Part shown: piece after piece, positions 4,308 through 62,980 of the stretch | Position numbering within the stretch: the stretch's first letter is position 1 | How the letters are laid out: the number at the start of each line of letters is the position of its first letter | Source of the DNA: Isurus oxyrinchus | Taxonomy: Eukaryota | DNA: 64,000 nt | Assembly (NCBI GenBank): GCA_026770705.1 | Contig: JANJGN010000009.1 | Coordinates: 163,928,001 to 163,992,000 of the forward strand | Direction: 5' to 3' | The notes under the pieces: model-generated | The model's database searches: none | What the model was told of the DNA's origin: nothing | What the model saw: the letters and a program-made list of their open reading frames with translations, nothing else | Program-made: the position numbers and the translations under genes

Positions 4308-7300
4308 GGGCAGGATTTTCCGAGCCCGCTGGCAGCAGGTGTAATAAGTGGCATGTGTGGATAATATGGTGTGAGCTGCTTCACAATGGCAGCATGAAGG
4401 CAGGTTGTGATCGTCCGCTCAGCCCACCTACAGCGGGTCGTGCTTCCCGCTATCGGTCAGCGGGGAGCTAATTGTTATACATCAGCATGTAAATAAATGG
4501 CCATCCTGCCAGGCTCTTGGAACCCGGCCGTATCCTCTGTCCACGTTAGCGGGAAAGCACGCCGACGTGATTCACAACAGCACACAGGCAATTTGTACCT
4601 GGTGGCCTTGACTCTGGGGGAAATGGGGTGAGTGAGCAGCAGCGTTCTCCACAGCTTGCCTGTTGTTTACAGGCTTCAGGGATGCCTGACCCCGGATGTG
4701 ACTGCTGAGAGGGGGGTCTCCGGGGGGGGTAAGAGCTGGCCAGCCTTGAAATGCTGAGGGCAAGGTGTCTAGTGGCAAGTGCTGGCTGCCTTGGAGGTGG
4801 ATACTGAGGGGGAGATGTCCAGGGTCATGTGATGACCAACCTCAGAGGCGAATGGTGTCGGTGGCTCCATGCTCAGGACCATCTCAGATGCAGCCATTAA
4901 ACTTAAGACGCATCTGGTGCTGCGTCCTCCTTCAGTACCTCAGCCCTTTCAGGAGCTGGTGCGCAGTATCACTGGTCACAGATGCTGGTGTGATGGGGGT
5001 CAGCCCCACCTTAAAGATGCTGAGAGCTCACAGTGAGAATGAGAGAACTCTGTGGGGCCTGCCCACTCCATTCTGGCAGCAATGCCCAGCTCCGCCGAGG
5101 TGCGGGCATCAGTAATGTGTCCAGGGAGTGTGAGGCTGGACCATCACTGTTATCTGAAGGTTGCACAGAGCACAGGGAAAAGGCCCTGGACTCATACACC
5201 TGCCCTTTATCTTGCACAGGAAGGTTTCACATCTGAGTGACAAGAACACTGCTCATCAGAACAAGGAGCCACAGGCAGGGTGACATTCTTAGGAGTTTAC
5301 TGACAATAGTGAACAATATGTACATGTGACCAACACCCGTACCCAGGCTGTGCAACTACATTTCCCTAACTTTCCTAACCCTGCCACTACATCTTGCTGC
5401 TCCCCAGACATCCACAGCAGAGGTGGAGCTAACCCGCTGCATGTGACGCCCTGTCTGTGATGACACTGGTGGGCGTCCTCTGGAGGGCTGAGACTTGGTG
5501 GGCCCCGGCCTGCTTTCGGGGTCCTGCTGTGTGGTAGTGGCCCCCTCCTCGGCCTGGGGGGCTGGAGCTGCTGAGATCCTAGGAAGAGGGGAGTCGGGTT
5601 GGCCAGTCACTCCCAGAACCTCCTGAGTCGATGGCCCCGGAGTGTGTACCTGCTGCTCCTCCTCCCTATCGGTGTCTGATGGCCCTTGGCTGACTCTGAG
5701 AGCGGAGGGTGTAGCTGGAGTGAGATTGAGCTAATTGTAACCCCTCTCTCATATACACTGTTGGAGGGTAAATATAGCATCAGCGATGGAGTTCACCATG
5801 CACAGCAGCACAGGAGTGACGTCCTGGGCCAAGGTCTCCATGGCAGCTGCCATCCTGCCAGTGTTGACCTCGGTGTATTGCAGCGCCGGAGTTATCACCT
5901 CAACCTGAAGATAGACGGACCCCTCCATCATGCCTTGCAATCTGAGGAGTGCAGCGGGCATCCCTTCCTGATGTTCCCGAGCTTGCCTTTGCAATTCCAG
6001 TAACTGTGACATGACCGAGCCCAGAGGCTGTCATCTGACTCGGACTCAGCAACATTGTGGCCTCCAGCATCCTCTGAGGGGCAGGGGACCTGGGAAGTCC
6101 CTGCCTCCACCTGCTGTAGATCAAACAGTGCGATGTGCTCCCAGATTGTGATCCTCAGGCTACTCTAAAGCTAGGTCCCACTGAGGTGTGTGTCTCTGCG
6201 CCGGCAGAGGCTGTGGGTGAGCTCTGTGACGGAACTTCAGGGAGAGTGCCTTCCGATTCCTCTTCAGAGGTTTCTTCAGGAGACCCTGGGTCATGGACTC
6301 TGTCGGCTGCTTCCCAGATGTGTCTGTGAAAGCAAGGGGAGATAATGAGTGCATGGCAGTGGCCTGTGATAAAGGACACATCACTCACAGCATGGTTATC
6401 TGATGGGTGTTGCACTGCTGGACCCTCACTTGATAGGGCAGTGCCAACCTTACCATCAGCACAGGACCGGCCCTGATCATTGCCGGTCAGCTGGATGGCT
6501 CTGCTTTCGAATTCTGTCAGAACTTTGATCTCCGGCATCCCTCCACCTGTCTCTGACCTTTCCCCCCTGTTGTGTGCCTGTTTGTCCTGTGTGGATATGG
6601 ATGGGGACAGTGTGTCAGGATGCCTGCAGGGGACAGATGATAAGTATGCCTGGCCTGTGTGGGTGGGGAGTGGTCCCGTGGATAGGGTGAGAACAATGAA
6701 GGTGTATGTGAACAGGTGAATGGTGACGTCCCATGCACTGGCAGTGAGTGAGGGCCCTGTAGATGTGTGATGGGTTTGTGAGTGTGTGAATTGGGTTTGT
6801 GAAAAGAGTGACTTACCCTGGAGGAACGGAGGAGATCATTCATCCTTTTGCGGTACTGGGTGACTGTCCTCCTCTGCAGGACGTTCACACTGACCACCGC
6901 TGCCTCCACCTCCCAAGCCGGGTTGGGTACTTTGCTGCCCACCCTGCGGTCAGAGCGTGGGGTAGAGCACATGCCGGTGCCCCTCCACGGCATCCAGCAG
7001 TCGCTTGAGGGACCCATCAATGAAGCAGGGGTCTGCAGTCTTTTTTCCCTCTGCTGGCCATGTCTCCCAGGCAGGGGTGGTGAGCTGGTGGCGATGAGTG
7101 CTTTGATGGTAGCTGCCTTTTAAAGATGGTGGCCAGCGTGATGTAACAGCGGGGTGATGGTGCGTGGGCGAATGAGAGCCCGCTTGCCATGGAAACGGTG
7201 TGTTTCACGGGGGTGAATAAATAATGAGCCGGGTTCAGGATGATATGGTGTGAAAACCCGTCATCTTCGTCGGCAGGTAGGACTCCATTTTACCCACCCG

Positions 7301-7337: not shown

Positions 7338-7989
7338 ACAGATACAGACACCACTAAACTCTCATTTAAAATAATTTCCAATAACATTATAAACATTAAT
7401 ATAATGCTTCACACTTCAATAATATGTTTTACATGGGATGGAACCTTTATAACTGTAGAATGGGAGACCCACAGGTATAATAAAGAAGGTGTTTTCCTTT
7501 TAGAAACCTGATATGATCTTAATGTTATTATGTTATGATTTTTATCCATATTTTAGCAAATACAATCTACACTTGTGAGGAATTCCCTGTTTCCTAATGA
7601 CCACAAGCGCAGTTTCAAGCACGAAGCCTGATTCCCTGTTTGACCACCTCCTCTCTTGCCCCCTCCATTGCCTCTGTGCTGTCAGACTGCCTGTCCAGCT
7701 GTTTGTCCAACAGCCAGTCCCAAATTACAACTGAACATTGTGAAGACTGAAGCCACTGTCTTTGTCCCCACTACAAACACTTTTCCTTATAGCCACTGAT
7801 TCTATCCACCTCCCTGTCCAATTGAGTTTTCATCCAATGTTGTTCTTACCTACAAATTCGACTGCTCCAATACCATCCTAGTTGACCTTACATCTTCCAC
7901 CCTGAACCAACTTAAGCTCATCAAAACTTTTGCTGCCAGTTTTACGATGAGTAAGGCTCTATATCAATGCAAGTTATTGTTCTTGTGCT

Positions 7990-9460: not shown

Positions 9461-10380
9461 GCGATGGAGGTAGTGAATGTGGGGGTGGAGGAGGAGACAT
9501 CAGCAGCGACAGCAGCAGAGACAGTGACTGAGGCTGAGGAGAGGGAGGCAGCGGCTGTGACAGTGACAGAGGGAGAAGCAGCGAAGGCGGCAGCAGCAAA
9601 GGCTGAGGCCACAGTGAGGGAGGCTGTGGAGAGGGAGCTGGAGGTGGGGCAGAGGCAGCGAGGAGACGGTACGAGACCAGGAGCAGCAACAAAACCTGCC
9701 TTGTGGTTTGTGAGGCTCAGGGCAATGGCGTCTGTGAGTTGATATCTTCCATGTGCCATGTGTGTGTCTCCGAGTCAGCGCACCGGACCACACTGCTTCT
9801 GCCCGATTAGGGCGCTTCAGTGGAGTCCGACACCAGTCCAGTGCCACCCAGCTCCCATTCCCGAGGACAGGTGATGGAACCTGCCCAGTGCCAGGATGAG
9901 CTGCTTGGTAAGATCGGGAGGTGGGAAGTAGAGAAGGCAGCCGACCAGGAAAAGCTGGAGGATATCTCCAGGATTACTGACTGTCTCCAAGAAGAAACTC
10001 TTGTAGCCTTCAGGCAGGGTATATATATGTTTATATAGCTGCAATTTACAGTTACCTGCCACATCCCTTTTAACACTTTCTAATGCAGCATCGCTCTGAT
10101 CAGAATCAGATTTATTGGGGTTGTGCAAATGTCTCCCCAGCCTCTGATATAACAATAAAAAGCTGCTTTTTCCTTTCCAGTTGCAGTAAGAGGAATGTCC
10201 CAGCCTCTCAATGTGACAGGGCAGCCCAGGACTATGTCTCTCAGTGCAACACCCAGGAACACGCACAGTGCAGCCCCCACATTGATTGTTCCAGTTGTGG
10301 GGGAAAGCGTGCATGTGGAGTAAGTGTACAATTGGGAAGATATTGATTCTCACAACATTTCCATGGCTTTAAATCAAATT

Positions 10381-10484
10381 GAGTTCTGTTGAAGGGTCAT
10401 GAGGACTCGAAACTTCAACTTTGCTCTTCTCCGCCGATGCTGACAGACCTGCTGAGTTTTTCCACTTATTTCTGTTTTTGTTTT
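10381..10484 (+). mobile_element. Short Penelope pLTR-derived insertion with hammerhead-like motif; absent from copy B
   Basis: Empty site at about 52778; GAGTT CTGTTGA A GGGTC ATGAG GACTC GAAA CTTC AACT. Confidence 0.75.
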
Positions 10485-10665
10485 ATTCTGAATGTTTTGT
10501 CTGGAGTCAATTACAAGCAGCGTAGACAATGTCTGTGTTTTAATTGTGTCTGGCTGTCCTCTTTTTTCACAATAAAATTTGCCAGGCTTTTACTCAACTT
10601 TTATTCTGAGTGTTTTTTCTGAGTTTATGGAGATATAACCTCATATTCTGCTGAAATGCACTTTA

Positions 10666-19600: not shown

Positions 19601-22600
19601 TAAAAGGTCCCCTCATGCAAACCAGTGTTTACAGCTCCTCTGAGGGGCTTTGGACTACGACTCATTCAAAACCTGGCCCGAGTCCATGAAAATTGCAGAG
19701 GAGTAGGACGTGTCTGTCTCCACAATGGAGGCAGCCAGGTTGGAGTGTAAAAAACAAAAATACAAACAAAAAACTGCGGATGCTGGAAATCCAAAACAAA
19801 AAGTAAGAAATACCTGGAAAATCTCAGCAGGTCTGGCAGCATCGGCGGAGAAGAGCACAGTTGATGTTTCGAGTCCTGATGACCCTTCAACAGAACTAAG
19901 TGAAAAGAAGAGAGGGGTGAAATATAAGCTTGTCTAAGGGGTGGGGGTGGGGGTGCGGGTGGATAGAGAAGTGGGGAGGTGGTTGTTGGGACAAGCAAGC
20001 AGTGATAGGAGGAGATAACCAAAAGATGTCACAGACAAAAGAACAAAGAGGTGTTGAAGGTGGTGATATTATCTAAAAGAATGTGCTAATTAAGAACGTA
20101 TAGCAAGACAAGCAAGGTACAGATAGGTCATGTGGGGGTGGGGTGAAATAAGACTAAAAGGGCATAAAATGTATAGATAAATGATCAGTGGAATACATTA
20201 AAAATATTGCAAATAGGTGGGAAAAGAAAAATCTATATAAATTATTGGAAAAAAGAAAAAGGATGGGGAAGAAATGGAAAGGGGGTGGGAATGGAGGAGG
20301 GAGTTCAAGATCTAAAATTGTTGATCTCAATATTCAGTCCAGAAGGCTGTAAAGTGCCTAGTCGGAAGATGAGGTGTTGTTCCTCCAGTTTGCGTTGAGC
20401 TTCACTGGAACATTGCAGCAGGCCAAGGAACAGACATGTGGGCAAGAGAGCAGGGTGGAGTGTTGAAATGGCAAGCGACAGGGAGGTTTGGGTCATTCTT
20501 GCGGACAGACCGCAGGTGTTCTGCAAAACAATCACCCAGTCTGCGTTTGGTCTTTCCAATGTAGAGGAAACTGCATTGGGAGCAACGAATGCAGTAGACT
20601 AAGTTGGGGGAAATGCAAGCGAAATGCTGCTTCACTTGAAAGGAATGTTTGGGCCCTTGGACGGTGAGGAGAGAGGAATTGAAGGGGCAGGTGTTGCATC
20701 TTTTGCGTGGGCATGGGGAGTTGCCATAGGTGGGGGTTGAGGAGTAGAGGGTGATGGAGGAGTGGACCAGAGTGTCCCAGAGGGAACGATCCCTATGGAA
20801 TGCCACCGGGGTGGTGAAGGGAAGATGTGTTTGGTGGTGGCTTCATGCTGGAGTTGGCGGAAATGGTGGAGGATGATCCTTTGAATGCGGAGGCTGGTGG
20901 GGTGATAAGTGAGGACAAGGGGGACCTTATCATGTTTCTGGGAGGGAGGAGAAGGCGTGAGGGTGGATGCGCGGTAGATGGGCCGGACACGGTTGAGAGC
21001 CCTGTCAACGACCGTGGGTGGAAAACCTCAGTTAAGGAAGAAGGAGGACATGTCAGAGGAACTGTTTTTGAAGGTAGCATCATTGGAACAGATGCGACGA
21101 AGGCGAAGGAACTGAGAGAATGGGATGGAGTCCTTACAGGAAGCGGGGTGTGAGGAGCTGTAGTCGAGGTAGCTGTGGGAGTCGGTGGGTTTGTAATGGA
21201 TATTGGTGGACAGTCTATCACCAGAGATTGAGACACAGAGGTCAAGGAAGGGAAGGGAAGTGTCAGAGATGGACCATTTGAAAATGATGGAGGGGTGGAG
21301 ATTGGAAGCAAAATTAATAAATTTTTCCAGGTCCAAACGAGAGCATGAAGCAGCACCGAAGTAATCATCAATGTACCAGAGAAAGAGTTGTGGGAGTGGG
21401 CCGGAATAGGACTGGAACAAGGAATGTTCCACATACCCCATAAAGGGACAGGGGCTCATGTGGGTACCCTTAGTCACACCTTTTATTTGGAGGAAGTGAG
21501 AGGAGTTAAAGGAGAAATTGTTCAGTGTGAGAACAAGTTCAGCCAGACGGAGGAGAGTAGTGGTGGATGGGGATTGTTCGGGCCTCTGTTCGAGGAAAAA
21601 GCTAAGGGCCCTCAGACCATCCTGGTGGGGGATGGAGGTGTAGAGGGATTGGATGTCCATGGTGAAGAGGAAACAGTTGGGGGCAGGGAACTGGAAATTG
21701 TTGATGTGACGTAAGGTGTCAGAGGAATCACGGATGTAGGTGGGAAGGGACTGGACAAGGGCAGAGAAAAAGGATTCAAGATAACGAGAAATGAGTTCCG
21801 TGGGGCAGGAACAGGCTGACACGATCAGTCTGCCGGGACAGTTCTGTTTGTGGATTTTGGGTAGGAGGTAGAAGCGGGCCGTCCGAGGTTGGGCGACTAT
21901 CAGGTTGGAAGCTGTGGGAGGAAGATCCCCAGAGGGGATGAGGTCAGTGACAGTCCTGGAAACAATGGCTTGATGTTCAGTGATGGGGTCATGGTCCATG
22001 GAGAGGTCGGAGGAAGTGTCTGCGAATTGACGCTCAGCCTCTGTGAGGTAGAGGCCAGTGCGCCAGACAACAACAGCACCACCCTTGACAGCGGGTTTGA
22101 TGACAATGTTGGGGTTGGATCTGAGGGAACGGAGTGCAGTAAGTCACAAAACAACTGTTTGCTGAAATGCTAAACAAAGATAAATATTGAGATAAAAGCA
22201 AAGAACTGCGGATGCTGGAAATGCAAACCAAAGACAGAAATAGAAATATCTGGAAAAACTCAGCAGGTCTGGCAGCATCGGTGGAGAAGAGCACAGTTGA
22301 TGTTTCGAGTCCTCATGACCCTTCAACAGAACTAAGTAACAATAGGAAAGGGGTGAAATATAAGCTGGTTTAAGAGGAAGGTGGGTGCGTTGTTGGGACA
22401 AGAAGCCAGTAATAGGTGGAGATAACCAAAAGATGTCACAGACAAAAGAACAAAGAGGTGTTGAAGGTGGTGATATTTTCTAAAGGAATGTGCTAATTAA
22501 GGGTAGAAAGCAGGACAAACAAGGTACAGATAGACCTAGTGGGGGTGGGGTGGGGTGAAGGAATACTAAAAATTCTAAAAATTAGAGATTAACAGTGGAT

Positions 22601-25600
22601 GGAAATACATTTAAAAATAATGGAAATAGGCGGGAAAAGAAAACTCTATATAAACTATTGGAAAAAAACAAAAAGTGGAGGAAGAAACGGAAAGGGGATG
22701 GAGATGGCGGTTGGGGCCAGGGAACTGGAAATTGTTGATGTGACGTAAGGTGTCAGAGGAATCACGGATGTAGGTGGGAAGGGACTGGACAAGGGGAGAG
22801 CGAAGGGAGTCAAGATAATGAGAATTGAGTTCCGTGGGGCAGGAAGAGGCTGACACGATCAGTCTGCCGGGACAGTCCTGTTTGTGGATTTTGGGTAGGA
22901 GGTAGAAGCGGGCCGTCCGAGGTTGGGAGACTATCAGGTTGGAAGCTGTGGGAGGAAGATCTCCAGAGGAGATGAGGTCAGTGACAGATCTGGAAGCAAT
23001 GGCTTGATGTTCAGTGGTGGGGTCATGGTCCAGGGAGAGGTAGGAGGAAGTGTCTGCGAGTTGACGCTCAGCCTCCACAAGGTAGAGGTCAGTGCGCCAG
23101 ACAACAACTGCACCACCCTTGTCAGCGGGTTTGATGGCAATGTTGGGGTTAGGCCTGAGAGAATGGAGTGCAGTATGTTCAGAGAGAGACAGGTTAGAAT
23201 GGGTGAGAGGAGCAGAGAAATTGAGACGACTAATGTCACGCCGACAGTTCTCAATGAAAAGATCAAGAGAAGGTAAGAATCCAGAGGGAGGGGTCCAGGT
23301 GGAGGGAGAATATTGGAGGTGGGTAAAAGGATCCGTTGAATGGGGAGAGGACTCCTGCCCAAAGAAGTGAGCCCGGAGACGAAGACGGTGGAAGAAGAGT
23401 TCAGCATCATGCCGAGCCCGAAATTCATTGAGGTGAGGACGTAAGGGTATGAAACTAAGTCCTTTGCTGAGCACTGAACGTTCAGCATCAGAGAGGGGAA
23501 GGTCAGGGTGTATAGTGAATACCCGACCGGGGCTGGGATTGGAAGATGGGGTGGGGACAGAGGGACAGGCAGGGTTGGAGGGTCCTGGATGTGTGTTGGT
23601 ATCACTGAGTTGTTGCAGCTTGCGTTCCTTAGCACTTGAGAGAAAGAGAAAAGGTTTCTTGTTGAGGCGACGGATGAGACGAAGAATAGAATGAAACTGG
23701 GGGCACGGGCAGCTTTGGAAAGGGGTACGGCGATGCTGCTGGAGGGAGAGGTCGAATGTGTTCATATGGCAGCGCATGGCACTGAGTGTGGATCTCAGAA
23801 TGCAACGGGAACAGTATTCCGAGGAATGTTGTATGTCCCAGAGATACCTGTAATCCTGGGTTGGTTCGAATCCGATGGAATTTCAGTTGAGATCCACATG
23901 GGGTAAGTCGGAGACGGAGACAGTCACTGAGAAAGGAAATATGGCTGTGAAAGCGGGTTTTAGTAAACACCTTGTCAAACACCAGGAGAGAAATGGAAAG
24001 CAATGAAGGTAAATAAGGCAAAAGAGAGATATGAAAATCCTGACGGAGAGTAGTACAAAACTTCTTTAAGGTAGGGATGTCTTGAAGAGAAGTGGCAGTC
24101 AATTAAACACGGATAAAAGCAAAAAACTGCGGATGCTGGAAATTCAAAACAAAAACAGAAACATAAATAGCTGGAAAAACTCAGCAGGTCTGGCAGCATC
24201 AGCGGAAAGAGCACAGTTGATGTTTCGAGTCCTCATGACCCATCAACAGAACTAAGTAAAAATAGGAGAGGGGTGAAATATAAGCTGGTCTAAGGGGTGG
24301 GGGTGGGTGGTGGTGGAGGGAGAAGTTGTTGGGACAAGCAAGCAGTGATAGGAGGAGATAACCAAAAGATGTCACAGACAAATGAACAAAGAGGTGTTGA
24401 AGGTGGTGATATTATCCAAAAGATTGTGCTAATTAAGGATGGGTAGCAGGACAAGCAAGGTATATGGTGGCATCATGCTGCAGTTGGAGGCGGAAATGGC
24501 GGAGAATGATCCTTTAGTGCGGAGGCTGGTGGAGTGATAAGTGAGGACAAGGGAGACCTCTTCATGTTTCTGGGAGACTTGCTGCCTTCTTCCAGTGAAG
24601 CTCAATGCAAACCGGAGGAACAGCACGTCATCTTCCGACTAGGCACTTTAGAGCCATTGGGACTGAATATTAAGTTCAACAATTTTAGATCATAAACTCC
24701 CTCCTCCATCCCCACCCCCTTTCTGTTTCTTCTCCCTCCTTTTTCCTTTTTCCAATACTTTATATAGATTTTTCTTTTCCCACCTATTTCCATTATTTTT
24801 AATGTATTGCACCGATCATTTATCTATACCTTTTAAGCCCTTTAAGTCTTATTTCACCCCACCCCCACTAGAGCTATCTGTACCTTGATTGTCCTGCTAT
24901 CCATTCTTAATTAGCACATTCTTTTAGATGATGTCACCACATTCAACACCTCTTTGTTCTTTTGTCTGTGACATCTTTGGGTTATCGCCTCCTATCACTG
25001 CTTGCTTGTCCCAACAACTACCGCCGACTTCTCTCTCCACCGCCCCCCCCGCCCCCCGACCCATTAGACCAGCTTATATTTCACCCCTTTCCTATTTTTA
25101 CTTCGTTCTGTTGAAGGGTCATAAGGACTCTAAATGTCAACTGTGCTCTTCTCTGCCGATGCTGCCAGACCTGCTGAGTTTTTCCAGGTTGGGGAGTTCT
25201 GGGTGTGGCTTTTGAATGATCCAGCCTGTATCCTTTAAAGCTGCTCCCAAAATCACACAACCCAGGAACGCAGTTGGGAATCCCAGAATTAGGACACACC
25301 CGCCATTTTTAAAGGGCTCCTGAATCAACCCAAGTTGGTGAAATCCAGGCCGTCACTTTGGTCTGAAGGCTGCACAAAGCACAGGGTAGAGGTCCTGGAC
25401 TGAGACACCTGCCTTTATCTTGTACAGAAAGTGTTCACATGTGAGTGACATGAACATTGCTCATCAAAACAAGGAGCGATAGGCAGGGAGACATTCTTTG
25501 GAGTTTATTGACAATAATGAACAGTATGTACAAGTGATTAACACCCGTGCCCAGGACGTGCAACTGGCCTAAATAGCCAAGTGGTTATGGTACTGGGTTT

Positions 25601-28600
25601 GTAACCCCAAGATCAGGAATTCAAATCTCACAATGGCAAAATATGAAACAATGTAACTTGATCTGAATAGGAACAGATGGAAATGTGTTTGTACTCAAAA
25701 GAGTTACATTTCCTCAACTCTCGAGGCCTTCCGTGCTCAGTGGGGACTGGGGTGCTTTATTGACCCCTTTTAGCACTTTTTGGTTTAAAGTTGTAAGTTT
25801 CCTTTAAACTTCGTTCTTGGTTTTACAGCTGACCTAAATTAGGGGCTGTCCCTTATTTATCCTAATTTTGTAAATTTAGTTTAATTGTTTTGACTCTATA
25901 AGAGTTACATCTCCTCAACCCCCGTAATATGAGCCGCCTCGGGGACATGTTCTCTGTGCCATTTGGCACAGCAAAGAGGAGCTTTTTGTACGGACTGCTG
26001 CTGCACATCTTCCATTTTCTCGCCCTTCTCCGCCGCCTGGATATGCCCTGGCATGCCTTGTTGCCTTCCGGCAGCGGAGGCCCCCGATGGGAGGCCCTCT
26101 GAGGAGGTGTCCTCCCCCTTTCTATCGGGGACCTGGGTTCGAGGGTGTTGCATGCAGCAGTCCCCTATAATAGGAGAATTCATAGGTTCACGGACTCCCA
26201 AGACACATGCCCTTTTCGTGGTCTTGTGGAGTCCGTGGACCATGCATACATAGGGTGTGGTAGGTTGCACTCCCTTTTCAGTTACTTGATGAACCTTTTG
26301 TTAATGTTTTGTTTGCACTTCAGCCCCACGCTCCTGATCTATGGACACCCGGTGCGGAAGGGGGTCGGAAAGGAGGAGGACCTCCTCGTGAACCTGCTCC
26401 TGGGCCTGGCCAAGTTGGCCATTAACAGGTCCAGGCAGCAGGCGATCGAAGGGGGAGTCCCGCCCAATTATTTATCCCTCTTCCGCGGCTACGGTCGCAG
26501 CCGGATGTCCCTGGAAAGGGAGCATGCGGTGTCTGCCGGCACTCTCGAACCCTTCCGTGCTCGGTGGGCACCGCGGGGACTGGGGTGTTTTGTTGACCTC
26601 TTTTATCACATTTTGGTTTAAAGTTGTAAGTTTCCTTCAAACTTTGTTCTTGGTTTTACAGCTGACCTGAATTAGGGGCTGTGCCTGATTTATCCCAATT
26701 TTGTTAATTTAGTTTAATTGCTTTGACTCTATAAGAGTTACATCTCCTCAACTCTCGAGACCTTCTGTGCTCGATGGGTGACCACGGGGGTTGGGGTGCT
26801 TTATCCAGCCTCTTAATCACATTTTGGTTTGATGTTGTAAGTTTCCTTTAAATCCTGTCTTTGGTTTTGCAGTGACCCTAACTTAGGGGCTGCGTTTTAT
26901 TTTGTTCCTCATTTTGTTAATTTAGTTTATTTGTTTGGCTTTAAAAGAGCTACATCTTCTCAACTTTCCTAATCCTCCCGCTACATCTTGGTGCTCCGCA
27001 GACATCCAGAGTGGAAGTAAAGACAGTCTGCTGACTGCTATGCTCTGTCTGTGATAACTTTGGCGGGCGTCCTCTGGAGGCCTGAGGCCTGGAGGGCCCC
27101 GGCTTCCTTTCGAGGTCCTGCTGTGTGGCATTACCACCCTCCTTGGCCTGTGGACCTGGAGCTGTCAAGGTCACAGTAAGAGGGGAGTTACCAGGATGAA
27201 TGGCCCCGGAGGGTACACATGTTGATCCTTCTCGCTATTGGCTGAATTAGCGAGCAGCAGGGGTAGCTGAAGTGAGATTGAGCTGCCCGCACCCCTCTCT
27301 CATACACACTGTCAGGGGCCAACTATACATCAGCAATGGAGTTCAGCCCCACAGCAGTGTAGGAACGGTGCCCTGGACCAACATCTCCAAGGCACCTACG
27401 ATCCTACCAGTGTTGACCTTGGTGCATTGACATGCCAGCGCTATCACCTCAGAGTGCAGGTGGATGGATTCCTCCATATTAACTGAAAATTTTATTTAAA
27501 AAGAGAGAAGGTCACCATCTAATCCTTTATTAACTGTGTTTAATTGTATGCAGTGGTAGCATTAAACAGATGTCTTCAGGTCTGGGCCTTGTACACACTG
27601 TCTCCTGGGAGTTCTGACCAGCTACCCTGCTGTCTTCAGGGAGATCTGGCCAACCATCCTGCTGTGTTCTGGGAGATCTAAGCAGCTACCCCCTCACATA
27701 GGCTTCAGTATTCCCTTAAATGTGTTTCTTCTCTTTCATCTCTCTTTGTTGCAACCAGTCTGAAAAGAAATGCTTTTCTTCAAAGGATTGATTAAATCAA
27801 TCTTTACCTCTTAGACTTGTAAAAACAAACTTACTCTATGTTTATGTCACGTCCTTACACCTTTTTACAACCTGCATATATCTCCCTTTGAACTAAAACA
27901 ACACAATTCAAACTATTTCTGTTATTGCTTCATGTACAAGTCTGTTGTAGTTCTTTTTTGTTTATTAACATATCAAAACCACTTCAAATTGTTGACTTTT
28001 GACCCTATCCACTGATGAGGCAGTCCATGTCATGGAACCATAACCTTAAATCTGGAGATAGGCTCGTCAGGGATGTCAGGAATCACTTCTTCACGCAAAG
28101 TATAGCGGAAATCAGGAACACTCTCCTCAAAAAAGCTCTTGAACTTAAATGAAAATTTCAAAACTGATTGACAGATTTTATCTGGTAGCAATATTCGGGT
28201 TATGGGACCCCGGTAGGTAAATGGACAGAAGATACTGGTCAGTTGGGATTTAATTGAATTGTGGAACAGGCTGAAGGGGCTGCATGTCCGAATCCCTTTT
28301 CCATGTTCTGGAGCCCCAGTTAATTTTTCAGTGGTCTGGGCCTTGTGAGTAACAATGTGCTGTGAAACAAGCTCACAAACAGTTAGCATTTCAAAGAGAC
28401 ACTTTCCAATCACCAGGCAAACTGTGACCTGTGTTGTTTCAGAGTACAGTTTGTGACAGTGAAAGCAGTGAAGGCCTGCCAAACCTCATTAAAATCAAGT
28501 TCTGTCGAAGGGTCATGAGGACTCGAAACGTCAACTCTTTTCTTCTCCATCGATGCTGCCAGACCTGCTGAGTTTTTCCAGGTAATTCTGTTTTTGTTTT

Positions 28601-31600
28601 GGATTTCCAGCATCCGCAGTTTTCTTTGTTTTTATCTCATTAAAATGTTGGTGAAATTGTCACTTTTCTCTGGCTAATCCCTTGACCAAAGAGGGAATTT
28701 TAATTCCCCTCCCCCATCCTGCATCGTGTTGAGGCATGATGGGATTTGCTGGATCCAGAACCTTCTCCAGCACGGCTTGTGATCCAGGAGACACACGAAA
28801 GCTTCACCCCCACCCCCAGGCAAATGTTTTATACAATTTCTCCCTCCCCATGATTGGCCAATCCTGCCCCAAGCAGCAAAGTCACCCTGACTCCCTCCTC
28901 GCTGTTGTGCTCCGAGGCAACATTCCCACCAATTTCCAAACTTTTACCATAACGTTCCTACTTGGAAACCAGCCAAACATTCAATCAGTGTGCAAGAATT
29001 CTGGTGAGATTTTGCTGTTAAATTCGGCACAAACTCAACATTCCTGGTATTTCCAGCTTTCTCACCACCCCACGCACAGTCCCCCCTCTCGTCTCCACGT
29101 ACCAGGGTTGAAGTGTTCTATCGCAGCATGCAGAGAACCAGAGCCAATCACATTTACATTCTTATCCAAAGCTACAAAACATGTAACCGATATCTGACAA
29201 CATTTTGCCCTCATTTTACCCTTTGCTTTTCTAAGATTCTCTCCAACCAATTCACATTCAACTCACAAACAATGAAACAGCATTGGAGGCTCACTACCAG
29301 CTACGAAGAGATATTGTTCACCATGATATTCATGTTAACATACTCTCAGTATCATAGCTGCTGTTCTGATCTGGAGACCTGATATGTTCTGATATAATGG
29401 CTGAAAGGGTAACTCAGGCCTCTAAGAGGATGGAGAGATATGGGGATGGATTTTTAAAAAGTATGGTGTCAGGATTAGAGATGGGTGGGTGTGAAATTTG
29501 ACACCGCTGGTCTCCATGCCAATTTACTGTTACAATCCCAAGCCCGAAACATTTAGAAAGCAGGCGGCTTGCAGTCAAGTGGTGGGCAGCTAACTTAGGA
29601 AATAACATTTACCAAAGGGGCCAATTAAAGACCCATTCCTGCGCCCACTGGGATTTCATTCAGCAATGCAAGCAGACCACATTACCCCTTCAGGATCATG
29701 GCCCGGCAGCTGCCGGGTTTTGAAACATAAAATAAACTTACCTGGACTTTCCCCTTGCTGTCTCCATGCTCAGGTCAGCAACTCCCACCTCACCTGGTGA
29801 GGCCCTCTAGCATCAGGAGCCCGCCCACTGTCCCTGATTGGATGGTGAGCCAGTTCCAGTCTTTTGATTGGCAAGAACATTGAAAATTGCAGTGGGCATG
29901 CCTAAAGAATGGTGAATGGTGTCAGGACCTGAAACTATCTCCCATGTCCAGTTCCCAAACCCAAATTTAACATCCACCCCATAGAGTGGTAGATGTGTTG
30001 GTGAGATTCCAACATGGCAGAGCCTGGCTGAGATGAAGTGCAAAGTTTGAAGAGTATTTGATTATTAAATGTTCAGTATCTGAATGTTTCTTTCTTTCCA
30101 ACAGAACCCGTGTCTGTTCCTGTGCTTAGATTTTCATCACCAGCAAATGTCTCATGTTCTGGGGGTTCAGTGTCCGTCTCCTGTGAGTCTGTCCAGGGAT
30201 CCCTTCCCATTCAGTACACATGGTATGAAAAGAACCTGTCTGAAGATTCAAAGATCTCTGACACCAATAAACTGGATCTACATTGTCAATCCTTCAAACA
30301 GCAACATCATCAATATTACTGCACAGCCTCAAATAATCAGGGAGTAAAATCCAGTGACACTGTCACTGTTAACTCAACACTCATGAATGTAACAACGAAA
30401 AGCTACAGTTATGTGATACAAATTGGAAACATTGGTAAGTGTTACTTTCTACAAACAACGTGGCGAATGAATGTTTAAAATTCATGTCTATCCAAACTGG
30501 TCACTGTTTCAGTTCCTTCAGTTTATCTGAGAAATTGCAGCTGGCCAAATTCACTCTCTCTGGTTCCTCAAACATTCTGAACAAGGTCACTAAGTTGCAT
30601 TTTTCATGAAAAATGGACAGGATCAGAAAATATCCCCAAAACATGCAAAAATATTGCAGAATCTCCAATAAACCCATCGAATCAAAATAGCATTTGATTG
30701 ACAGAGCTTTCATAAAGCAATTTGTCTATTTCCAGCAGATGGAATTGTGAAATGCAACCTCCAACTGTTGTGTCCTAGTTTGGGAAGGATATCACTGATA
30801 GAATAGAGAAGAATTGAATTAAAATGAACCCTTGGACGAGAGGTTTTAGTCATGAGGAAAGTATCATCACAACTGAGGTGAATGACCAGCTGGAGGACGT
30901 GGAAATTGTTAGAAATTTGGATAAGATAACTCTAACTATTTCCACTAGTCAGTGAGTCAGCAACAAGAGAGCATTAACTTTAAAATTATCACTAAAAGGA
31001 CAAAGGGAGAAATTTGGAGAATTTTATTGATGCAAACTGTTTTTAGGACATGGAATGCCCAACTGAAAGAAGTTTACAAACAAATTTAATAATAGATTTT
31101 AAAAGGGAAACAAATGTATGAGGGTGTGGGAAAAGGACAATGAAATGGAATTAAATGAGGAGATCATTCAGAGAACCAGCATTGGAGCGATGGGCTGAAT
31201 TCCCTCCCCTGTGTTGTAAAAATTCCATCATTCCAGACAAAATCTCAACTTATCCTGTCTAAAAAATTAACTATTCCCTCCCCATAAAACAATGACCCTG
31301 GTTCTGACATAAGGAGGACTTTAGCCTATTTGAATGTAGCGGTTCAATTTTCTGCAGAGTGGGTGCAGCATGTTCACCGAGAAACACCAACATGGGCACA
31401 AAACAAAGAGAATCACATTTTCACCTGAGCAGCAGGAGACAGGAATTTACATATGCAAATATATTGACTCTGGTCATGTGGTCTCTTGCCTCAGTTGTCA
31501 GGGAAGAAGGGTGGAATTTTACACCCCCATTGCGCCAGGGACTGGGCTGTAAAATGCAGCCAGCCATTCTAAACTCCATGCACTCCAGCAGGACCATAAA

Positions 31601-38549: not shown

Positions 38550-39000
38550 CCCTTTTTTTTTCCCCAATAAATTATACAGATTGTTCTTTTCCCACCCATT
38601 TCCATTATTTTTAAATATTTTAAAATCTTTTATGCTCCCCCCACCCCCACTAGAGCTGTACCTTGAGTGCCCTACCATCCATTCTTAATTAGCACATTCG
38701 TTTAGATAATATCACCAACTTTAACTTTAACACCTATGTGTTCTTTTGTACCATTGTCGCTGACATCTTTTGATGATCTGCTTCTATCACTGCTTGTTTG
38801 TCCACACAACCACCTCTCTCTCTCTCTATCTCTCTGCCCCCCCCCACACACACCTTAAACCAGCTTATATTTCAATTCTTTCTTGGACTCGAAATCAAGT
38901 TCTGTCGAAGGGTCATGAGGACTTGAAACGTCAACTCTTTTCTTCTCCGCCGATGCTGCCAGACCTGCTGAGTTTTTCCAGGTAATTCTGTTTTTGTTTT
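38550..39000 (+). mobile_element. Penelope pLTR fragment with hammerhead-like motif, nested in older repeats
   Basis: Homologous to the pLTRs; caagttctgtcgaagggtcatgaggacttgaaacgtcaactc. Confidence 0.75.
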
Positions 39001-39979
39001 AGAGACCAAAGTGGTCCTGCAAAGCGATCACCCCACCCTCACAAGGACCATCTCTCACTTGTTCATGTTGTTCTTTCCAGAGAGCTTACCCTTGTCCTGT
39101 CATTATCACATTCTGCTTTCTGATCTTAATGTCACCATTAGCACCTCCTTTAGCCAGTATCACTATCAAGAAGACCCCTTTGTCCTTTTGTCTATGACAT
39201 CTCTGGCAATCTCTCCTTTGCCTCCACCTATCACTGATCTTCTATCCACCTTCACCTGCTCCACCTCCACTTAAACAGCATAAATTTCATTACATTTTTA
39301 CTACTCTCTCGGTTCAAGAAGAGTCATTAGGATTCCCTCCACAGATGCTGTTAGACCTGCTGAGTTTTTCCAGCATTTTCTGTTTTTGTTTCAGATTTCC
39401 AGCATCTGCAGTATTTTGCATTTATCTTAGTATTAAACTGAAGACCCTCCTATACCTTAGGTGGATGTAAAAGATCCCATGGCACTATTCAAACAGTTCT
39501 CCCAGTGTCCTGGTCAATATTCTGCACCCAGTATCGAGTAAAGAGATTACCTGCTTATTCATCCAGTTTTGGGCCCTTGCTGTATGATGATTTGTTGCCA
39601 CATCTCTCTGTTTCAAAAATACTTCATTGGCTGTGAAAGGCATTGTATAAATTGTAAGTTCAACTCTTCTTTCTTTTCTAATGAGCATTAGTTTCATTTT
39701 GTCGTTCAAACAATCTTTTTATCTCAGGGATTACCCTAAATACACAGAGTTTTGGGGATGCCCGGGTTGAGGCCTCTGACCCTGTACAAGGAACAGGCTG
39801 AAGGGAACAGTACCATTCCTGTGTAAAGGGCAAGGTTGGTATCCCCCAACAAGCCAGTGAGGGGCTAATAAAATAAATGGTATTAAAATTGTAAGTCCAC
39901 CTCTGTGGAGGGGTACAACTTCAAATGCAATTTGGCAAATACATTTTGAAAATCAGAACACTTTCCAGACTAGCACTTG

Positions 39980-41513: not shown

Positions 41514-42224
41514 GCACCCACTGAGAGCCAAGCCCAGCAGGCGTCTGGAAATGACCTGGGGCATCCGTGTGACCTCCTGTTTTAACTCGCAACTGGAGGT
41601 GCAGTCGGCAACACCTGGGGTCACAAGCTTTTATAACAGTGGATAACTCTCCAGAGTGCGCCTCAAAATGGGGGCACCCTTACGTTCCCCTCTCTGCAGC
41701 AGCAGTGCCCACCTCTGCCAGTGGAATTGCACCCCTGCCAAGGCTGCAGGCCCTTTAGCCTGCCCGCCTTCCTCAATTGGATGATAGGCCCGGGTGTGGA
41801 TTCTTAATTGGCTGCCTCCAGGAAGGTCTCTCAGGCAGACACATGGGTCGAGAGCCAAATATGGTCCCACGTTTTGATTATTTTTAAAGGGCACAAGATT
41901 CTGCCCAAGGTGTGCAGCCCTCTGAGGGCAATTACTTCTGATGTAAAATACTGCCACTCACATCTTGTAAAGGAAATTCTTCATTTATTCTCTTACCTAT
42001 GAGCAGGAAACATGAATTTTAGTCAGGGTTTGTTGTCCTGAATTTTGCAGTTACTTTGGAGTTCTGAGATTGGTACATCTAGAAAAACTTGAAGTGAACT
42101 CATTAGCTTCATGATAAGCTCACCGTATGGACTGGTTCTCTGACTGCTCAGAGGCCTGATTTGATGGTTCTTCAAGGGTTTACCAATGTCTGACTAAAGT
42201 ATATATTATTGATCCAGCTCTACC

Positions 42225-42408
42225 CCCCACCCCCTTAAACCAGCTTATATTTCACCTCTTTTCTATTTTTACTTAATTCTGTTGAAGATACATACGGACT
42301 CAAAACGTTAACTGTGTTCCTCTCTGCAGATGCTGCCAGACCTGCTGAGTTTTTCCAGGTATTTTTATTTTTGTTTTGGATTTCCAGCATCCGCAGTTTT
42401 TTGATTTT
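42225..42408 (+). mobile_element. Short Penelope terminus with degenerate hammerhead motif
   Basis: pLTR homology; tatatattatt on both flanks. Confidence 0.65.
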
Positions 42409-61410: not shown

Positions 61411-62980
61411 TCACTTTGGTCTGAAGGCTGCACAAAGCACAGGGTAGAGGCCCTGGACTGAGACACCAGCCTTTATCTTGTACAGAAAGTGTTCACATGT
61501 GAGTGACATGAACATTGCTCATCAAAACAAGGAGCGATAGGCAGGGAGACATTCTTTGGAGTTTATTGACAATAATGAACAGTATGTACAAGTGATTAAC
61601 ACCCGTGCCCAGGACATGAAACTACATCTCCTCAACCAGGCGGTGTCTGGCGGCACCGTCGAGACGTTCCGTGCTCGGTGGGTGACCACGGGTGTTGGGG
61701 TCCTTTATCCAGCCTCTTAATCACATTTTGGTTTGATGTTGTAAGTTTCCTTTAAATCATGTCTTTGGTTTTGCAGTGACCCTAACCTAGGGGCTGCGTT
61801 TTATATTATCCCTCATTTTGTTAATTTAGTTTATTGGGTTGGCTTTAAAAGAGCTACATCTTCTCAACTTTCCTAATCCTCCCGCTACATCTTGGTGCTC
61901 CGCAGACATCCACAGTGGAGGTAAAGACAGTCTGCTGACTGCTATGCTCTGTCTGTGATAACTTTGGCGGGCGTCCTCTGGAGGCCTGAGGCCTGGAGGG
62001 CCCCGGCTTCCTTTCGAGGTCCTACTGTGTGGCATTAGCACCCTCCATGTCCTGTGGACTGGGAGCTGTCAAGGTCACAGTAAGAGGGGAGTTACCAGGA
62101 TGAATGGCCCCGGAGGGTACAAATGTTGATCCTTCTCGCTATGGGTACCCAATGGCCATTGGCTGAATCCTTGAGGAGCAGGGGTAGCTGGAGTGAGATC
62201 AAGCTGCCTGCACCCCTCTCGCATATACACTGTCAGGGGCCAACTATGCATCAGCAATGGAGTTCAGCCCCGCAGCAGTGTAGGAACGATGCCCTGGACC
62301 AACGTCTCCATGGCAGCTGCCATCCTACCAGTGTTGACCTCGGTGCATTGACATGCCGGCGCTATCACCTCAGAGTGCAGGCGGACGGACTCCTCCATTG
62401 TGCCTTGCAATCTGAGGGGTGCAGCAGATATCCCTTCCTGATGTTCCCGCGTTGGCCTTTCCAGCTCCAGCAACTGTGACATGACCAAATCCAGAAACGC
62501 GTCACCTGACTCAACCTCAGCAAATTTATGGCCTCCAGCTGCCCACTGAGTGCCGGACACCTGGGAAGCCCCTGCCGCTGCCAGCTGTGGATCAGGCAGT
62601 GCGATTTGCTCACCAGCTGTGACCCTGAGTCTACTCTAAAGCTAGATCTCACCGAGGGGTGTGCCTCTGCGCTGGTGGAGGGTGAGGGTGAGGGCAGTGA
62701 CGGTACATCAAGGAGGGTCCCTCCAGGTTCCTCTTCAGAGATTTCTTTGGGGATTACTTGGTGTCCCTGGGTCTCCATCGGCTGTTACCCAGATGTGCGT
62801 GTGGAAGCAAGTGGAAATATTTTGTGCATGGCAGTGGCCTGTGAAACAGGACACATCACTCACAGCATGGTTGTCTGATGGATGTTGCACTGCTGGACCC
62901 TCACTTGGCTGAGGACCGCCGACCTCACCATTAGCACAGGATTGGTCCAGGCCGTTGCCGGCCAGCTGGATGGCCCTGTT
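61411..62980 (-). mobile_element. Harbinger fragment (copy B) with one Tx1 3' insertion at 61637-61854
   Basis: Homologous to about 5140-6500; TSD tacatctcctcaac (61623-61636) / tacatcttctcaac (61855-61868). Confidence 0.82.

What the first reader, a model, noticed from the sequence alone, without database searches (positions are those of the whole stretch)
25561..26964. Sequence-specific Tx1 retrotransposon stacking at one 14-nt target inside a Harbinger DNA transposon
Seen: the motif tacatYTYctcaac recurs at 25705, 25906, 26739 and 26951, each time directly after an element 3' end (aagagt/aagagc), giving four head-to-tail inserts. Copy B has a single insert with a clean 14-bp TSD (61623-61636 and 61855-61868). 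The related Harbinger at 4308-7337 shows the empty site (caac|tacatttccctaac, 5357-5370). The site overlaps the stop codon of the Harbinger Myb-like gene (..KVREM*), and the TSD regenerates the target so that it can be hit again. Established: Tx1-clade elements are target-specific, and Xenopus Tx1L/Tx2L insert into DNA transposons. Inference: a Tx1 family that uses Harbinger as a multicopy landing pad, with empty, single and fourfold-filled states all visible in one window.
Basis: partly seen in the sequence, partly recalled or inferred. Interest (0 to 1): 0.8.

Follow-up and report, generated by a model that had tools for sequence, protein, structure and literature searches.

The report
Stacked LINE/SINE inserts at one site
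Three truncated copies of a Tx1-like jumping gene and one small partner element sit head to tail at exactly the same base of an old DNA transposon in a shark genome; Tx1 elements in frogs and crocodilians are already known to do this, so it is a clear but ordinary example.

Summary
The 14-mer TACATYTYCTCAAC occurs exactly where stated (25705, 25906, 26739, 26951, 61623, 61855). A related copy of the host transposon has the empty site at 5357-5370.

Locus A reads, left to right:
- host flank
- a tRNA-like SINE (25565-25704), with no duplication upstream of it
- three 5'-truncated LINE 3' ends (25719-25905, 25920-26738, 26753-26950), each followed by a copy of the 14-mer

The LINE pieces belong to two lineages that differ by 18-19%, so the array is not a local tandem duplication. 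The ORF2 C-terminus in the longest insert matches APE+RT+zf-RVT proteins that databases name "Transposon TX1".

Four qualifications apply:
- Insert 4 and the single insert at locus B may be one ancestral event. Host flanks differ by 5.2% and the two inserts by 6.1%.
- Earlier scan notes list stacks of the same size 157 kb before this window and 68, 174 and 240 kb beyond it. These look like segmental copies, so the scan found this before on other DNA.
- Reads from a sister species show that most host copies are empty, that most SINE copies lie in unrelated AT-rich DNA, and that many related LINE copies have another 3' end.
- The label "Harbinger" could not be verified.

Kojima 2015 already describes Tx1 families that target Harbinger and Mariner transposons, with tandem copies sandwiching a duplication. 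I rate this a new member of a known kind, of modest interest.

The parts
25348..25564 (-). Left flank of host DNA-transposon fragment, copy A. It is the 3' UTR side of the host gene, which runs on the minus strand.
   Evidence: 97.7% identical to 61406-61622 and 85% to 5141-5356. Reads show thousands of genomic copies.
25565..25704 (+). Insert 1: a tRNA-Thr-like SINE lacking about 4 nt (GGCT) at its 5' end. It ends in the hairpin ACTC-AAAA-GAGT and has no target-site duplication.
   Evidence: Rfam tRNA 19.4 bits, below threshold. ARAGORN finds nothing. Read depth is about 11,400 in 1.9 Gb of reads, with AT-rich unrelated flanks and many SINE-SINE junctions. The tail aligns with the LINE tails.
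25705..25718 (+). 14-mer copy 1, TACATTTCCTCAAC
25719..25905 (+). Insert 2: 187-bp 3' end of the LINE, lineage 1, with 5' start TCTCGAG
   Evidence: 91.4% substitution identity to 26543-26738 with one 9-nt indel. About 75-fold read depth with consistent differences shows that other genomic copies of this sub-lineage exist.
25906..25919 (+). 14-mer copy 2, TACATCTCCTCAAC
25920..26738 (+). Insert 3: 819-bp 5'-truncated LINE, lineage 1. The decayed ORF2 C-terminus has an in-frame stop at 26100-26102, an open piece at 26103-26618 and its stop at 26619-26621. The 3' UTR is 26622-26738.
   Evidence: Translation. Protein hits. Perfect 14/14 flanking duplication. 934 reads continue 5' of 25920 with one consensus at 0.98 agreement, so genomic copies are longer.
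26739..26752 (+). 14-mer copy 3, TACATCTCCTCAAC
26753..26950 (+). Insert 4: 198-bp 3' end of the LINE, lineage 2, with 5' start TCTCGAG
   Evidence: 93.9% identical to 61659-61854 and only 81-82% to inserts 2 and 3.
26951..26964 (+). 14-mer copy 4, TACATCTTCTCAAC. This copy is closest to the genomic consensus of the empty site.
   Evidence: The empty-site consensus (T)ACATCTTCTTAAC comes from contigs.
26965..27477 (-). Right flank of host copy A, holding the last coding exon of the host gene on the minus strand (...RKVEKM*).
   Evidence: 93.6% substitution identity to 61869-62398. Reverse complement read.
61623..61868 (+). Locus B: 14-mer, then a single 218-bp lineage-2 LINE 3' end (61637-61854), then a second 14-mer.
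5357..5370 (+). Empty target site in the related host copy C (4308-7337). The stop codon of the minus-strand ORF lies at 5356-5358.

Best explanation
An APE-type LINE of the L1/Tx1 group, most probably Tx1 clade, has entered one position of an abundant old DNA transposon several times by target-primed reverse transcription.

Proposed steps:
1. The bottom strand is nicked at 5'-...GAGRAGATGTA^GTTGC-3', which is between gcaac and TACAT on the top strand and inside the TAG stop of the host gene.
2. The LINE or SINE RNA is copied from that nick. Its very 3' end is a short hairpin (ACUCU-AUA-AGAGU, or GCUUU-AAA-AGAGC).
3. The top strand is cut 14 nt downstream, so the 14-mer is duplicated on both sides of the insert.
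4. Because the duplication recreates the site, later insertions land in one of the copies. This builds a head-to-tail stack in which each element is followed by a 14-mer.
5. A tRNA-like SINE carrying the same terminal hairpin used the same nick once, without a duplication.

What is shown:
- the same junction nucleotide at every insert
- the 14-bp duplications
- two LINE lineages
- different 5' ends
- the empty site
- the shared tail

What is inferred:
- the nick positions
- endonuclease specificity as the cause
- the order of events. I infer that the lineage-2 insert came first and is perhaps shared with locus B, and that insert 3 came last among the LINE pieces, because its duplication is still perfect.
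- microhomology (target ...CAAC against LINE ...GCAC|TCTCGAG) as the reason why two inserts start at the same base
For: - Motif positions and chance control.
- Junction sequences.
- Lineage structure: inserts 2 and 3 differ by 8.6%, insert 4 and insert B by 6.1%, and the two lineages by 18-19%.
- Inserts 2 and 4 each attract tens to hundreds of reads carrying their own consistent differences. They therefore represent genomic sub-lineages, not local copies of insert 3.
- The order short-long-short cannot come from one unequal crossover between inserts 3 and 4.
- Host copies with the empty site are the commonest continuation after 25564 in contigs of three runs: 137-159 contigs with consensus ACATCTTCTTAACTTTCCTAACCCTGCCGC.
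- The ORF2 C-terminus hits proteins of about 1,290-1,300 aa with Exo_endo_phos, RVT_1 and zf-RVT domains.
- Named relatives are 'Transposon TX1 uncharacterized 149 kDa protein' or 'YTX2'. The fragment aligns to residues 1140-1291 of a 1,303-aa YTX2 protein at E 7e-17.
- Human L1 ORF2p aligns only to the APE+RT part of such a relative, not to its C-terminus.
- The terminal hairpin has a compensatory A-U to G-C change between the two lineages and is shared with the SINE.
- Precedent: Tx1-9_AMi inserts into Harbinger, Tx1-Mar and SINEU insert into Mariner-N4_AMi with a 16-bp duplication, and tandem copies sandwich a duplication (PMC4494074).
Against: - Genome-wide specificity was not measured.
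- In reads of a sister species, the LINE family to which insert 3 belongs has depth of about 2,400, but depth falls to about 465 in the last bin. 486 reads continue from 26715 into the SINE tail at 25612, so most relatives carry another 3' end whose flanks are unknown.
- Thousands of SINE copies end AAGAGT+TACA and are followed by unrelated AT-rich DNA or by another SINE. The machinery that moves the SINE is therefore not restricted to this host site, and TACA may belong to the element or to a much shorter target.
- Insert 1 has no duplication.
- Insert 4 and insert B may be one event.
- No RT or endonuclease domain of this LINE is present in the window, so clade placement rests on the C-terminus and on automatic names.
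Confidence: 0.72

Rival explanations
1. Short motif plus self-stacking. The LINE/SINE system is not specific for 14 nt of the host transposon. It nicks at a short motif (N|TACA) and tends to land next to existing copies, because each insertion leaves that motif beside its own tail. The stack would then reflect a general habit of array-building that happened to start at this host site.
For: One search shows four things:
- SINE copies genome-wide match on through TACA (25707-25711) before their flanks become unrelated.
- Reads that join a SINE 3' end to the next SINE 5' end number about 960, roughly as many as the 1,090 reads that run into unrelated DNA.
- 887 reads join AAGAGT directly to position 25612.
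- Most host copies are empty.

In addition, the variant in the 5' half of each 14-mer goes with the element on its left: T6 after the SINE, C8 after lineage 1, T8 after lineage 2.
Against: - TACA occurs about every 250 nt, yet every event here and at locus B used the same nucleotide, including those with no element tail on the left (the SINE in locus A and the insert in locus B).
- The second cut is always 14 nt away.
- Depth over the lineage-2 tail (about 360) is close to depth over the adjacent host flank (about 390-440). That fits a tight association between the two.
Confidence: 0.17
2. Carried along rather than hit again. One lineage-2 LINE fragment entered a host copy once and was then multiplied with it, by transposition of the host element or by DNA-level duplication. 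Locus B, insert 4 and the other stacks in the genome would then be copies of one event. This reading reduces the number of independent hits but does not explain inserts 1-3.
For: - Loci A and B share the same left truncation point of the host (25348 and 61406) and non-host DNA on the right (27474-27565 matches 63800-63890).
- Host flanks differ by 5.2% and the inserts by 6.1%.
- Both loci have the T8 variant only in the rightmost 14-mer.
- Earlier scan notes list stacks of 1,410-1,420 nt at -157, +68, +174 and +240 kb.
Against: - The 5' junctions differ. Insert B starts 22 nt further 5' than insert 4.
- Insert 4 has exactly the junction of insert 2, which belongs to another lineage. That fits a junction formed at insertion by microhomology.
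- Inserts 1-3 are absent from locus B and belong to other lineages.
Confidence: 0.08
3. The array arose by local tandem duplication or unequal crossing-over of a single insert.
For: - Inserts 2 and 4 share a 5' start.
- The units are separated by an identical short repeat that could mediate slippage.
- The 8.6% difference between inserts 2 and 3 is not significantly above the 5.2% difference between the A and B flanks.
Against: - Insert 4 is 94% identical to the insert at locus B but only 81-82% to its neighbours, with lineage-specific indels.
- Insert 2 lacks 9-10 nt that are present in insert 3.
- Each insert recruits reads with its own consistent differences.
- The order short-long-short does not follow from a crossover between inserts 3 and 4.
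- Insert 1 is a different element.
Confidence: 0.03

Closest known systems
Tx1-9_AMi (alligator), a Tx1-clade LINE preferentially inserted into Harbinger DNA transposons (Kojima 2015, PMC4494074)
   Same: A Tx1-type LINE that uses one position of a multicopy DNA transposon called Harbinger as its target.
   Different: Tx1-9_AMi inserts about 300 bp from the 5' end of the transposon. Here the site is at the stop codon of the host's internal gene. The host is a shark, not a crocodilian. The host element's Harbinger status is unverified here, and no sequence comparison with Tx1-9_AMi was possible.
Tx1-Mar LINEs and SINEU SINEs in Mariner-N4_AMi (crocodilians; Kojima 2015, PMC4494074)
   Same: A LINE and partner SINE share one target in a DNA transposon. 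The duplication is long and defined (16 bp there, 14 bp here). Tandem copies sandwich the duplication and are explained there by sequential insertion.
   Different: SINEU heads derive from U1 or U2 snRNA, whereas the SINE here has a tRNA-like head. SINEU-3 is 90% in the target, whereas the SINE here is mostly elsewhere in the genome.
Xenopus Tx1L in Tx1D (as cited in PMC4494074: Christensen et al. 2000)
   Same: The founding case of a Tx1 LINE that inserts into a specific site of a non-autonomous DNA transposon, giving composite elements.
   Different: Tx1D is piggyBac-type. No stacking of several truncated copies is known to me for it; that statement rests on my own knowledge and was not checked.
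Stringent LINE/SINE pairs with a shared 3' stem-loop (UnaL2/UnaSINE1; Kajikawa and Okada 2002, cited in PMC4494074)
   Same: The SINE and LINE share only the terminal tail, which folds into a short hairpin.
   Different: Those LINEs belong to the L2 clade and are not site-specific.

Membership tests
Tx1 clade of non-LTR retrotransposons | ORF2 with an N-terminal APE endonuclease, an RT domain and a C-terminal Cys-rich (zf-RVT) region | tested here: inconclusive
   Only the last 172 aa of ORF2 are present, and the C..C..H..C motif is decayed (CPFRG...DHAYIGC). Pfam finds nothing in the fragment. Its full-length relatives P0082 and P0114 carry Exo_endo_phos, RVT_1 and zf-RVT.
Tx1 clade of non-LTR retrotransposons | RT phylogeny places the element with Tx1 and not with L1 or other clades | not testable with these tools
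Three proxies support Tx1:
- Relatives are named 'Transposon TX1 149 kDa protein' or 'YTX2'.
- The fragment aligns to the C-terminus of a YTX2 protein at E 7e-17.
- Human L1 ORF2p does not align to that C-terminal region.
Tx1 clade of non-LTR retrotransposons | Insertion at one defined sequence of a repeated target, with a duplication of fixed length | tested here: met
   Locally, five inserts share the same 3' junction nucleotide. The duplication is 14 bp, perfect for insert 3 and 13/14 for inserts 2, 4 and B. Genome-wide specificity is not established.
PIF/Harbinger DNA transposons (host element) | DDE transposase of the Harbinger type (DDE_Tnp_4) | tested here: inconclusive
   Copy C (3,030 bp) has no long ORF apart from the exons of the minus-strand gene. 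The five pieces scanned gave no Pfam hit. The plus-strand ORFs were not scanned.
PIF/Harbinger DNA transposons (host element) | Second gene encoding a Myb/SANT-like DNA-binding protein | tested here: inconclusive
   The first exon is split by a frameshift. It reads F.DGSLKRLLDAVEGHRHVLYP ... KVPNPAWEVEAAVVSVNVLQRRTVTQYRKRMNDLLRS and is followed by a GTAAGT donor. To my eye this resembles Myb_DNA-bind_5. Pfam is negative at E up to 10 and the word search found nothing.
PIF/Harbinger DNA transposons (host element) | Terminal inverted repeats flanked by a 3-bp TWA duplication | tested here: not met
   Terminal inverted repeats are present: GGGCAGGATTTTCCGAG against GGGCAGAATTTTCCCAG, 15 of 17. 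The flanks are ACAGA and ACAGA, 5 bp and not TWA. The left flank is a (CA)n run, so the 5-bp match may be chance.
tRNA-derived SINE with a LINE-derived tail | tRNA-related head with A and B boxes | tested here: inconclusive
   Rfam tRNA 19.4 bits against a gathering score of 29, E 0.61, over 25567-25638. ARAGORN finds nothing.
tRNA-derived SINE with a LINE-derived tail | 3' tail shared with the partner LINE, and high copy number | tested here: met
   The terminal TTTG.ACTC.A.AAGAGT hairpin is shared. 486 reads join the LINE 3' UTR (26715) to SINE position 25612. SINE depth is about 11,400 in 1.9 Gb of reads.

The most novel reading that the evidence does not exclude
The LINE/SINE system may home to its own tail. 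On this reading the element RNA carries TACA(T..) beyond the terminal hairpin, anneals to the nicked target, and templates the 5' half of each downstream 14-mer. That would explain why the 14-mer variant goes with the element on its left. Each insertion would then create the preferred site for the next one. The system would build head-to-tail arrays throughout the genome, which fits the finding that about half of SINE 3' ends abut another SINE. The host-transposon stack would be one visible case of this.
Probability: 0.15. Interest if true: 0.55.

Novelty: new member of a known kind. Interest (0 to 1): 0.3.

Why it matters
The stack adds a cartilaginous-fish example to the short list of Tx1-type LINEs that use another transposon as a safe, multicopy landing site. 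It also shows clearly how a duplication that recreates the target leads to stacks.

It is useful for repeat annotation of shark genomes. The composite [host + LINE tail] units and the SINE arrays will otherwise be called as new repeat families.

It offers a natural sequence-specific APE-type endonuclease and target pair that could be tested. It does not change what is known about the mechanism.

Tried and rejected
- Independent copies in public metagenome contigs. A 30-nt degenerate pattern from the 3' UTR found nothing. A 19-mer found 18 loci, but all match only the seed of 19-37 nt and are chance hits.
- ESM Atlas for the host gene. It was closed to new sequences.
- Pfam on the LINE fragment and on ten translations of host gene ORFs and exon pieces. 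There were no hits.
- Word search with the host exon-1 piece. There were no hits.
- ARAGORN on the SINE. It found nothing.
- Local tandem duplication as the origin of the array. I considered it and rejected it on lineage identities and read support.
- A discrete non-autonomous element of about 190 nt as the reason for the shared TCTCGAG start. This is not supported for the abundant family, because read depth does not rise after 26543 and no pile-up of molecule ends was reported. I prefer microhomology with the target end (CAAC against GCAC), but it is not proven.
- The single read-laying run lists only the best-supported loose ends. The composition of flanks after 26738/26752 and after 26950/26964 could therefore not be read out.

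Full report
**1. The observation**

The degenerate 14-mer TACATYTYCTCAAC occurs without mismatch at 25705, 25906, 26739, 26951, 61623 and 61855. A 12/14 version lies at 5357. In total there are 8 matches at up to 2 mismatches, against 2.4 expected, and no shuffle out of 100 reaches 8.

The sequence gives this anatomy for locus A:

| Coordinates | Feature |
|---|---|
| 25348-25564 | host flank |
| 25565-25704 | insert 1 |
| 25705-25718 | 14-mer |
| 25719-25905 | insert 2 |
| 25906-25919 | 14-mer |
| 25920-26738 | insert 3 |
| 26739-26752 | 14-mer |
| 26753-26950 | insert 4 |
| 26951-26964 | 14-mer |
| 26965-27477 | host flank |

Locus B has a 14-mer at 61623-61636, a single insert at 61637-61854, and a second 14-mer at 61855-61868.

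A more distant copy of the host element, copy C (4308-7337), is 85% identical on the left and 77% on the right. It reads gtgcaac|TACATTTCCCTAAC|tttcctaac with nothing inserted. A minus-strand ORF ends ...RVRKVREM* at 5356-5358. In loci A and B it ends ...RKVEKM*. The inferred junction therefore lies inside the TAG stop codon.

**2. What the inserts are**

Insert 3 carries a decayed reading frame. The frame has an in-frame stop at 26100-26102 and an open piece at 26103-26618. Its own stop is at 26619-26621, followed by a 117-nt 3' UTR. Inserts 2, 4 and B are the last 187-218 nt of the same kind of element.

The inserts fall into two lineages:

| Comparison | Substitution difference |
|---|---|
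| insert 2 vs insert 3 | 8.6%, plus one 9-nt indel |
| insert 4 vs insert B | 6.1% |
| lineage 1 vs lineage 2 | 18-19% |

Pfam sees nothing in the 161- to 172-aa fragment. A full HMMER search finds 168 relatives. Among them are proteins of 1,291 and 1,295 aa with Exo_endo_phos, RVT_1 and zf-RVT domains, to whose last 160 residues the fragment aligns. The relatives that carry names are called 'Transposon TX1 uncharacterized 149 kDa protein' (Oryzias, Takifugu, Betta) or 'YTX2' (Polyodon). The fragment aligns to residues 1140-1291 of a 1,303-aa YTX2 protein at E 7e-17. Human L1 ORF2p aligns only to residues 7-844 of such a relative, not to its C-terminus.

The element is therefore an APE-type LINE of the L1/Tx1 group and very probably Tx1 clade. 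A proper RT phylogeny could not be made, because the window holds no RT domain.

Insert 1 is different. It is a 140-nt element with a weak tRNA-like head (Rfam 19.4 bits, below the gathering score; ARAGORN negative). Its tail ends like the LINE tails.

**3. The shared tail**

The last 13 nt of all elements can form a hairpin at the very 3' end:

| Element | Terminal hairpin |
|---|---|
| LINE lineage 1 | ACUCU-AUA-AGAGU |
| LINE lineage 2 | GCUUU-AAA-AGAGC |
| SINE | ACUC-AAAA-GAGU |

The closing pair changes from A-U to G-C between the two lineages. This explains why the elements end in AAGAGT or in AAGAGC. A second hairpin in the 3' UTR also has one compensatory pair. With only two lineages this is thin evidence. 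It does fit the usual picture of a 'stringent' LINE whose RT recognises a 3' stem-loop that its SINE has borrowed.

**4. Tandem duplication or repeated insertion?**

Several facts speak for repeated insertion.
- Insert 4 is 94% identical to the insert at another locus but only 81-82% to its neighbours. It shares lineage-specific indels with that distant insert.
- Insert 2 lacks 9-10 nt that insert 3 has.
- The order short-long-short cannot arise from one unequal crossover between inserts 3 and 4.
- In raw reads of a sister species, inserts 2 and 4 each recruit tens to hundreds of reads that differ from the window consistently at the same positions. Examples are 25773 and 25777 for insert 2, and 26854, 26855 and 26906 for insert 4. 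Sub-lineages resembling each insert therefore exist elsewhere in the genome.
- Insert 3 has a perfect 14/14 duplication. The others have 13/14.

I conclude that the stack was built by successive insertions into a site that each insertion recreates.

The shared 5' start of inserts 2 and 4 (TCTCGAG) occurs in two different lineages. The LINE reads ...GGCAC|TCTCGAG and the target ends ...CTCAAC. Joining at the same microhomology is the simplest explanation, but it remains an inference.

**5. How many independent events?**

There are fewer than first appears.

Loci A and B begin at the same left truncation point of the host element. They also share non-host DNA to the right: 27474-27565 matches 63800-63890, and locus A lacks 1.4 kb that locus B has. 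Their flanks differ by 5.2% (38 of 730 positions) and their lineage-2 inserts by 6.1%. In both loci only the rightmost 14-mer has T at position 8. That fits one ancestral insert, followed in locus A by three more hits in the upstream copy of the 14-mer.

Against this, insert B starts 22 nt further 5' than insert 4. I leave the question open at about even odds.

Earlier notes of this scan list stacks of 1,410, 1,420, 1,416 and 1,410 nt at -157, +68, +174 and +240 kb from this window. Their equal sizes suggest segmental copies of this same stack, so they are not independent evidence. I could not read those loci.

**6. Genome-wide picture from reads**

About 1.9 Gb of raw reads of a sister species, plus Logan contigs of three runs, were laid on 25300-27500 at 85% likeness or more.

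- The host flank has a depth of about 3,500-4,000, so the host element has thousands of copies.
- The commonest continuation after 25564 in contigs is the empty site ACATCTTCTTAACTTTCCTAACCCTGCCGC (137-159 contigs per run). About 40 reads also join 25553-25563 directly to 26950-26955. Most host copies are therefore empty.
- The SINE has a depth of about 11,400. Its copies are preceded and followed by unrelated AT-rich DNA (agreement 0.3-0.4).
- SINE copies match the window through TACA (25707-25711) before diverging. About 960 reads join a SINE 3' end to the next SINE 5' end, and 887 reads join AAGAGT directly to 25612.
- The LINE family to which insert 3 belongs has a depth of about 1,800-2,600 over 25966-26705. 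Depth drops to 465 in the bin containing its last 33 nt.
- 486 reads continue from 26715 into SINE position 25612. A large part of that family therefore has a longer tail, the one the SINE carries.
- By rough arithmetic, only about 7-16% of copies have the short tail seen here.
- Depth over the lineage-2 tail (about 360 at 26906) is close to depth over the adjacent host flank (390-440). This fits a tight association between the two but does not prove it.
- The tool lists only the best-supported loose ends. What follows the short tails elsewhere in the genome could therefore not be read out.

For the SINE that test comes out against restriction to this site.

**7. Mechanism**

The best-supported reading is target-primed reverse transcription from a bottom-strand nick between gcaac and TACAT, with a second cut 14 nt downstream.

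Whether the endonuclease reads all 14 nt, or only a short motif such as TACA aided by annealing of the RNA 3' end, is open. The variant in the 5' half of each 14-mer goes with the element on its left: T6 after the SINE, C8 after lineage 1, T8 after lineage 2. This can be explained by descent, with the upstream copy mutating once and then being duplicated by later hits. It can also be explained by templating from the element RNA. The data cannot tell these two apart.

**8. The host element**

Copy C has terminal inverted repeats agreeing at 15 of 17 positions. It also has a multi-exon minus-strand gene. The first exon of that gene resembles a Myb/SANT-like domain to my eye and is followed by a GTAAGT donor.

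Pfam found nothing in any piece and the word search found no relatives. No transposase was seen. The element is flanked by ACAGA on both sides rather than by a TWA triplet. 'Harbinger' is therefore an unverified label.

**9. Comparison with the literature**

Kojima 2015 (PMC4494074) describes the following in crocodilians:
- Tx1-9_AMi is preferentially inserted into three Harbinger families.
- Tx1-Mar families and SINEU SINEs are inserted into Mariner-N4_AMi with a 16-bp duplication.
- Tandem SINEU-3 copies sandwich a duplication and are explained by sequential insertion.

The same paper recalls that Xenopus Tx1 inserts into the DNA transposon Tx1D. The present case has the same logic in a shark. 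A paper search for Tx1 in sharks found no description of it.

**10. Verdict**

The count of independent events, the breadth of specificity and the host's family name were overstated or remain unproven. This is a new member of a known kind, already met by this scan at paralogous loci, and of modest interest.

- The metagenome DNA scans gave chance hits only.

Noticed in passing
window 25565-25711 (reads): The tRNA-like SINE family builds arrays genome-wide. About 960 reads join a SINE 3' end (AAGAGT+TACA) to the next SINE 5' end, against 1,090 that run into unrelated DNA. About 700 reads each show the internal restarts 25667>25612 and 25667>25565. The SINE consensus starts about 4 nt (GGCT) before 25565.
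   Followed up: partly
window 26715 joined to 25612 (reads): 486 reads continue from the LINE 3' UTR (...TTTAGTTT) straight into the SINE's last 93 nt. An abundant form of this LINE therefore carries the SINE's whole tail, while the copies in the stack have a version about 70 nt shorter. An earlier scan note (s1-871382) reports the same LINE sitting behind the tRNA-Thr-like head.
   Followed up: partly
window 26867-26927: The lineage-2 LINE 3' UTR gives a weak Rfam match to DLEU2_4, a conserved region of a mammalian lncRNA (22.8 bits against a gathering score of 40, E 0.067). This is probably chance, or possibly an old repeat-derived segment.
   Followed up: no
window 4303-4307 and 7338-7342: Host copy C is flanked by ACAGA on both sides of its 15/17 terminal inverted repeats. 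That is 5 bp rather than the 3-bp TWA expected for PIF/Harbinger. The left flank is a (CA)n run, so this may be chance.
   Followed up: partly
window 25348/61406, 27474-27565/63800-63890, 63084-63519: Host copies A and B share the same left truncation point and a stretch of AT-rich non-host DNA on the right. Copy A lacks 1.4 kb that copy B has. In copy B the segment matching C 6893-7330 is inverted. A and B therefore look like DNA-level duplicates of one rearranged fragment, not two transpositions.
   Followed up: partly
window 19750-25190, also 10380-10490, 28490-28640, 38550-39430, 42220-42410: An unrelated repeat family occurs in many direct and inverted copies at 67-96% identity, just upstream of locus A. 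It was not identified.
   Followed up: no
window 26543-26550 (reads): The recurrent 5' start of the short inserts lies at a CTCGAG palindrome. The genomic consensus reads CTCTCGAGG, whereas insert 3 has CTCTCGAAC. Whether this stalls reverse transcription or merely offers microhomology with the target end is unknown.
   Followed up: no
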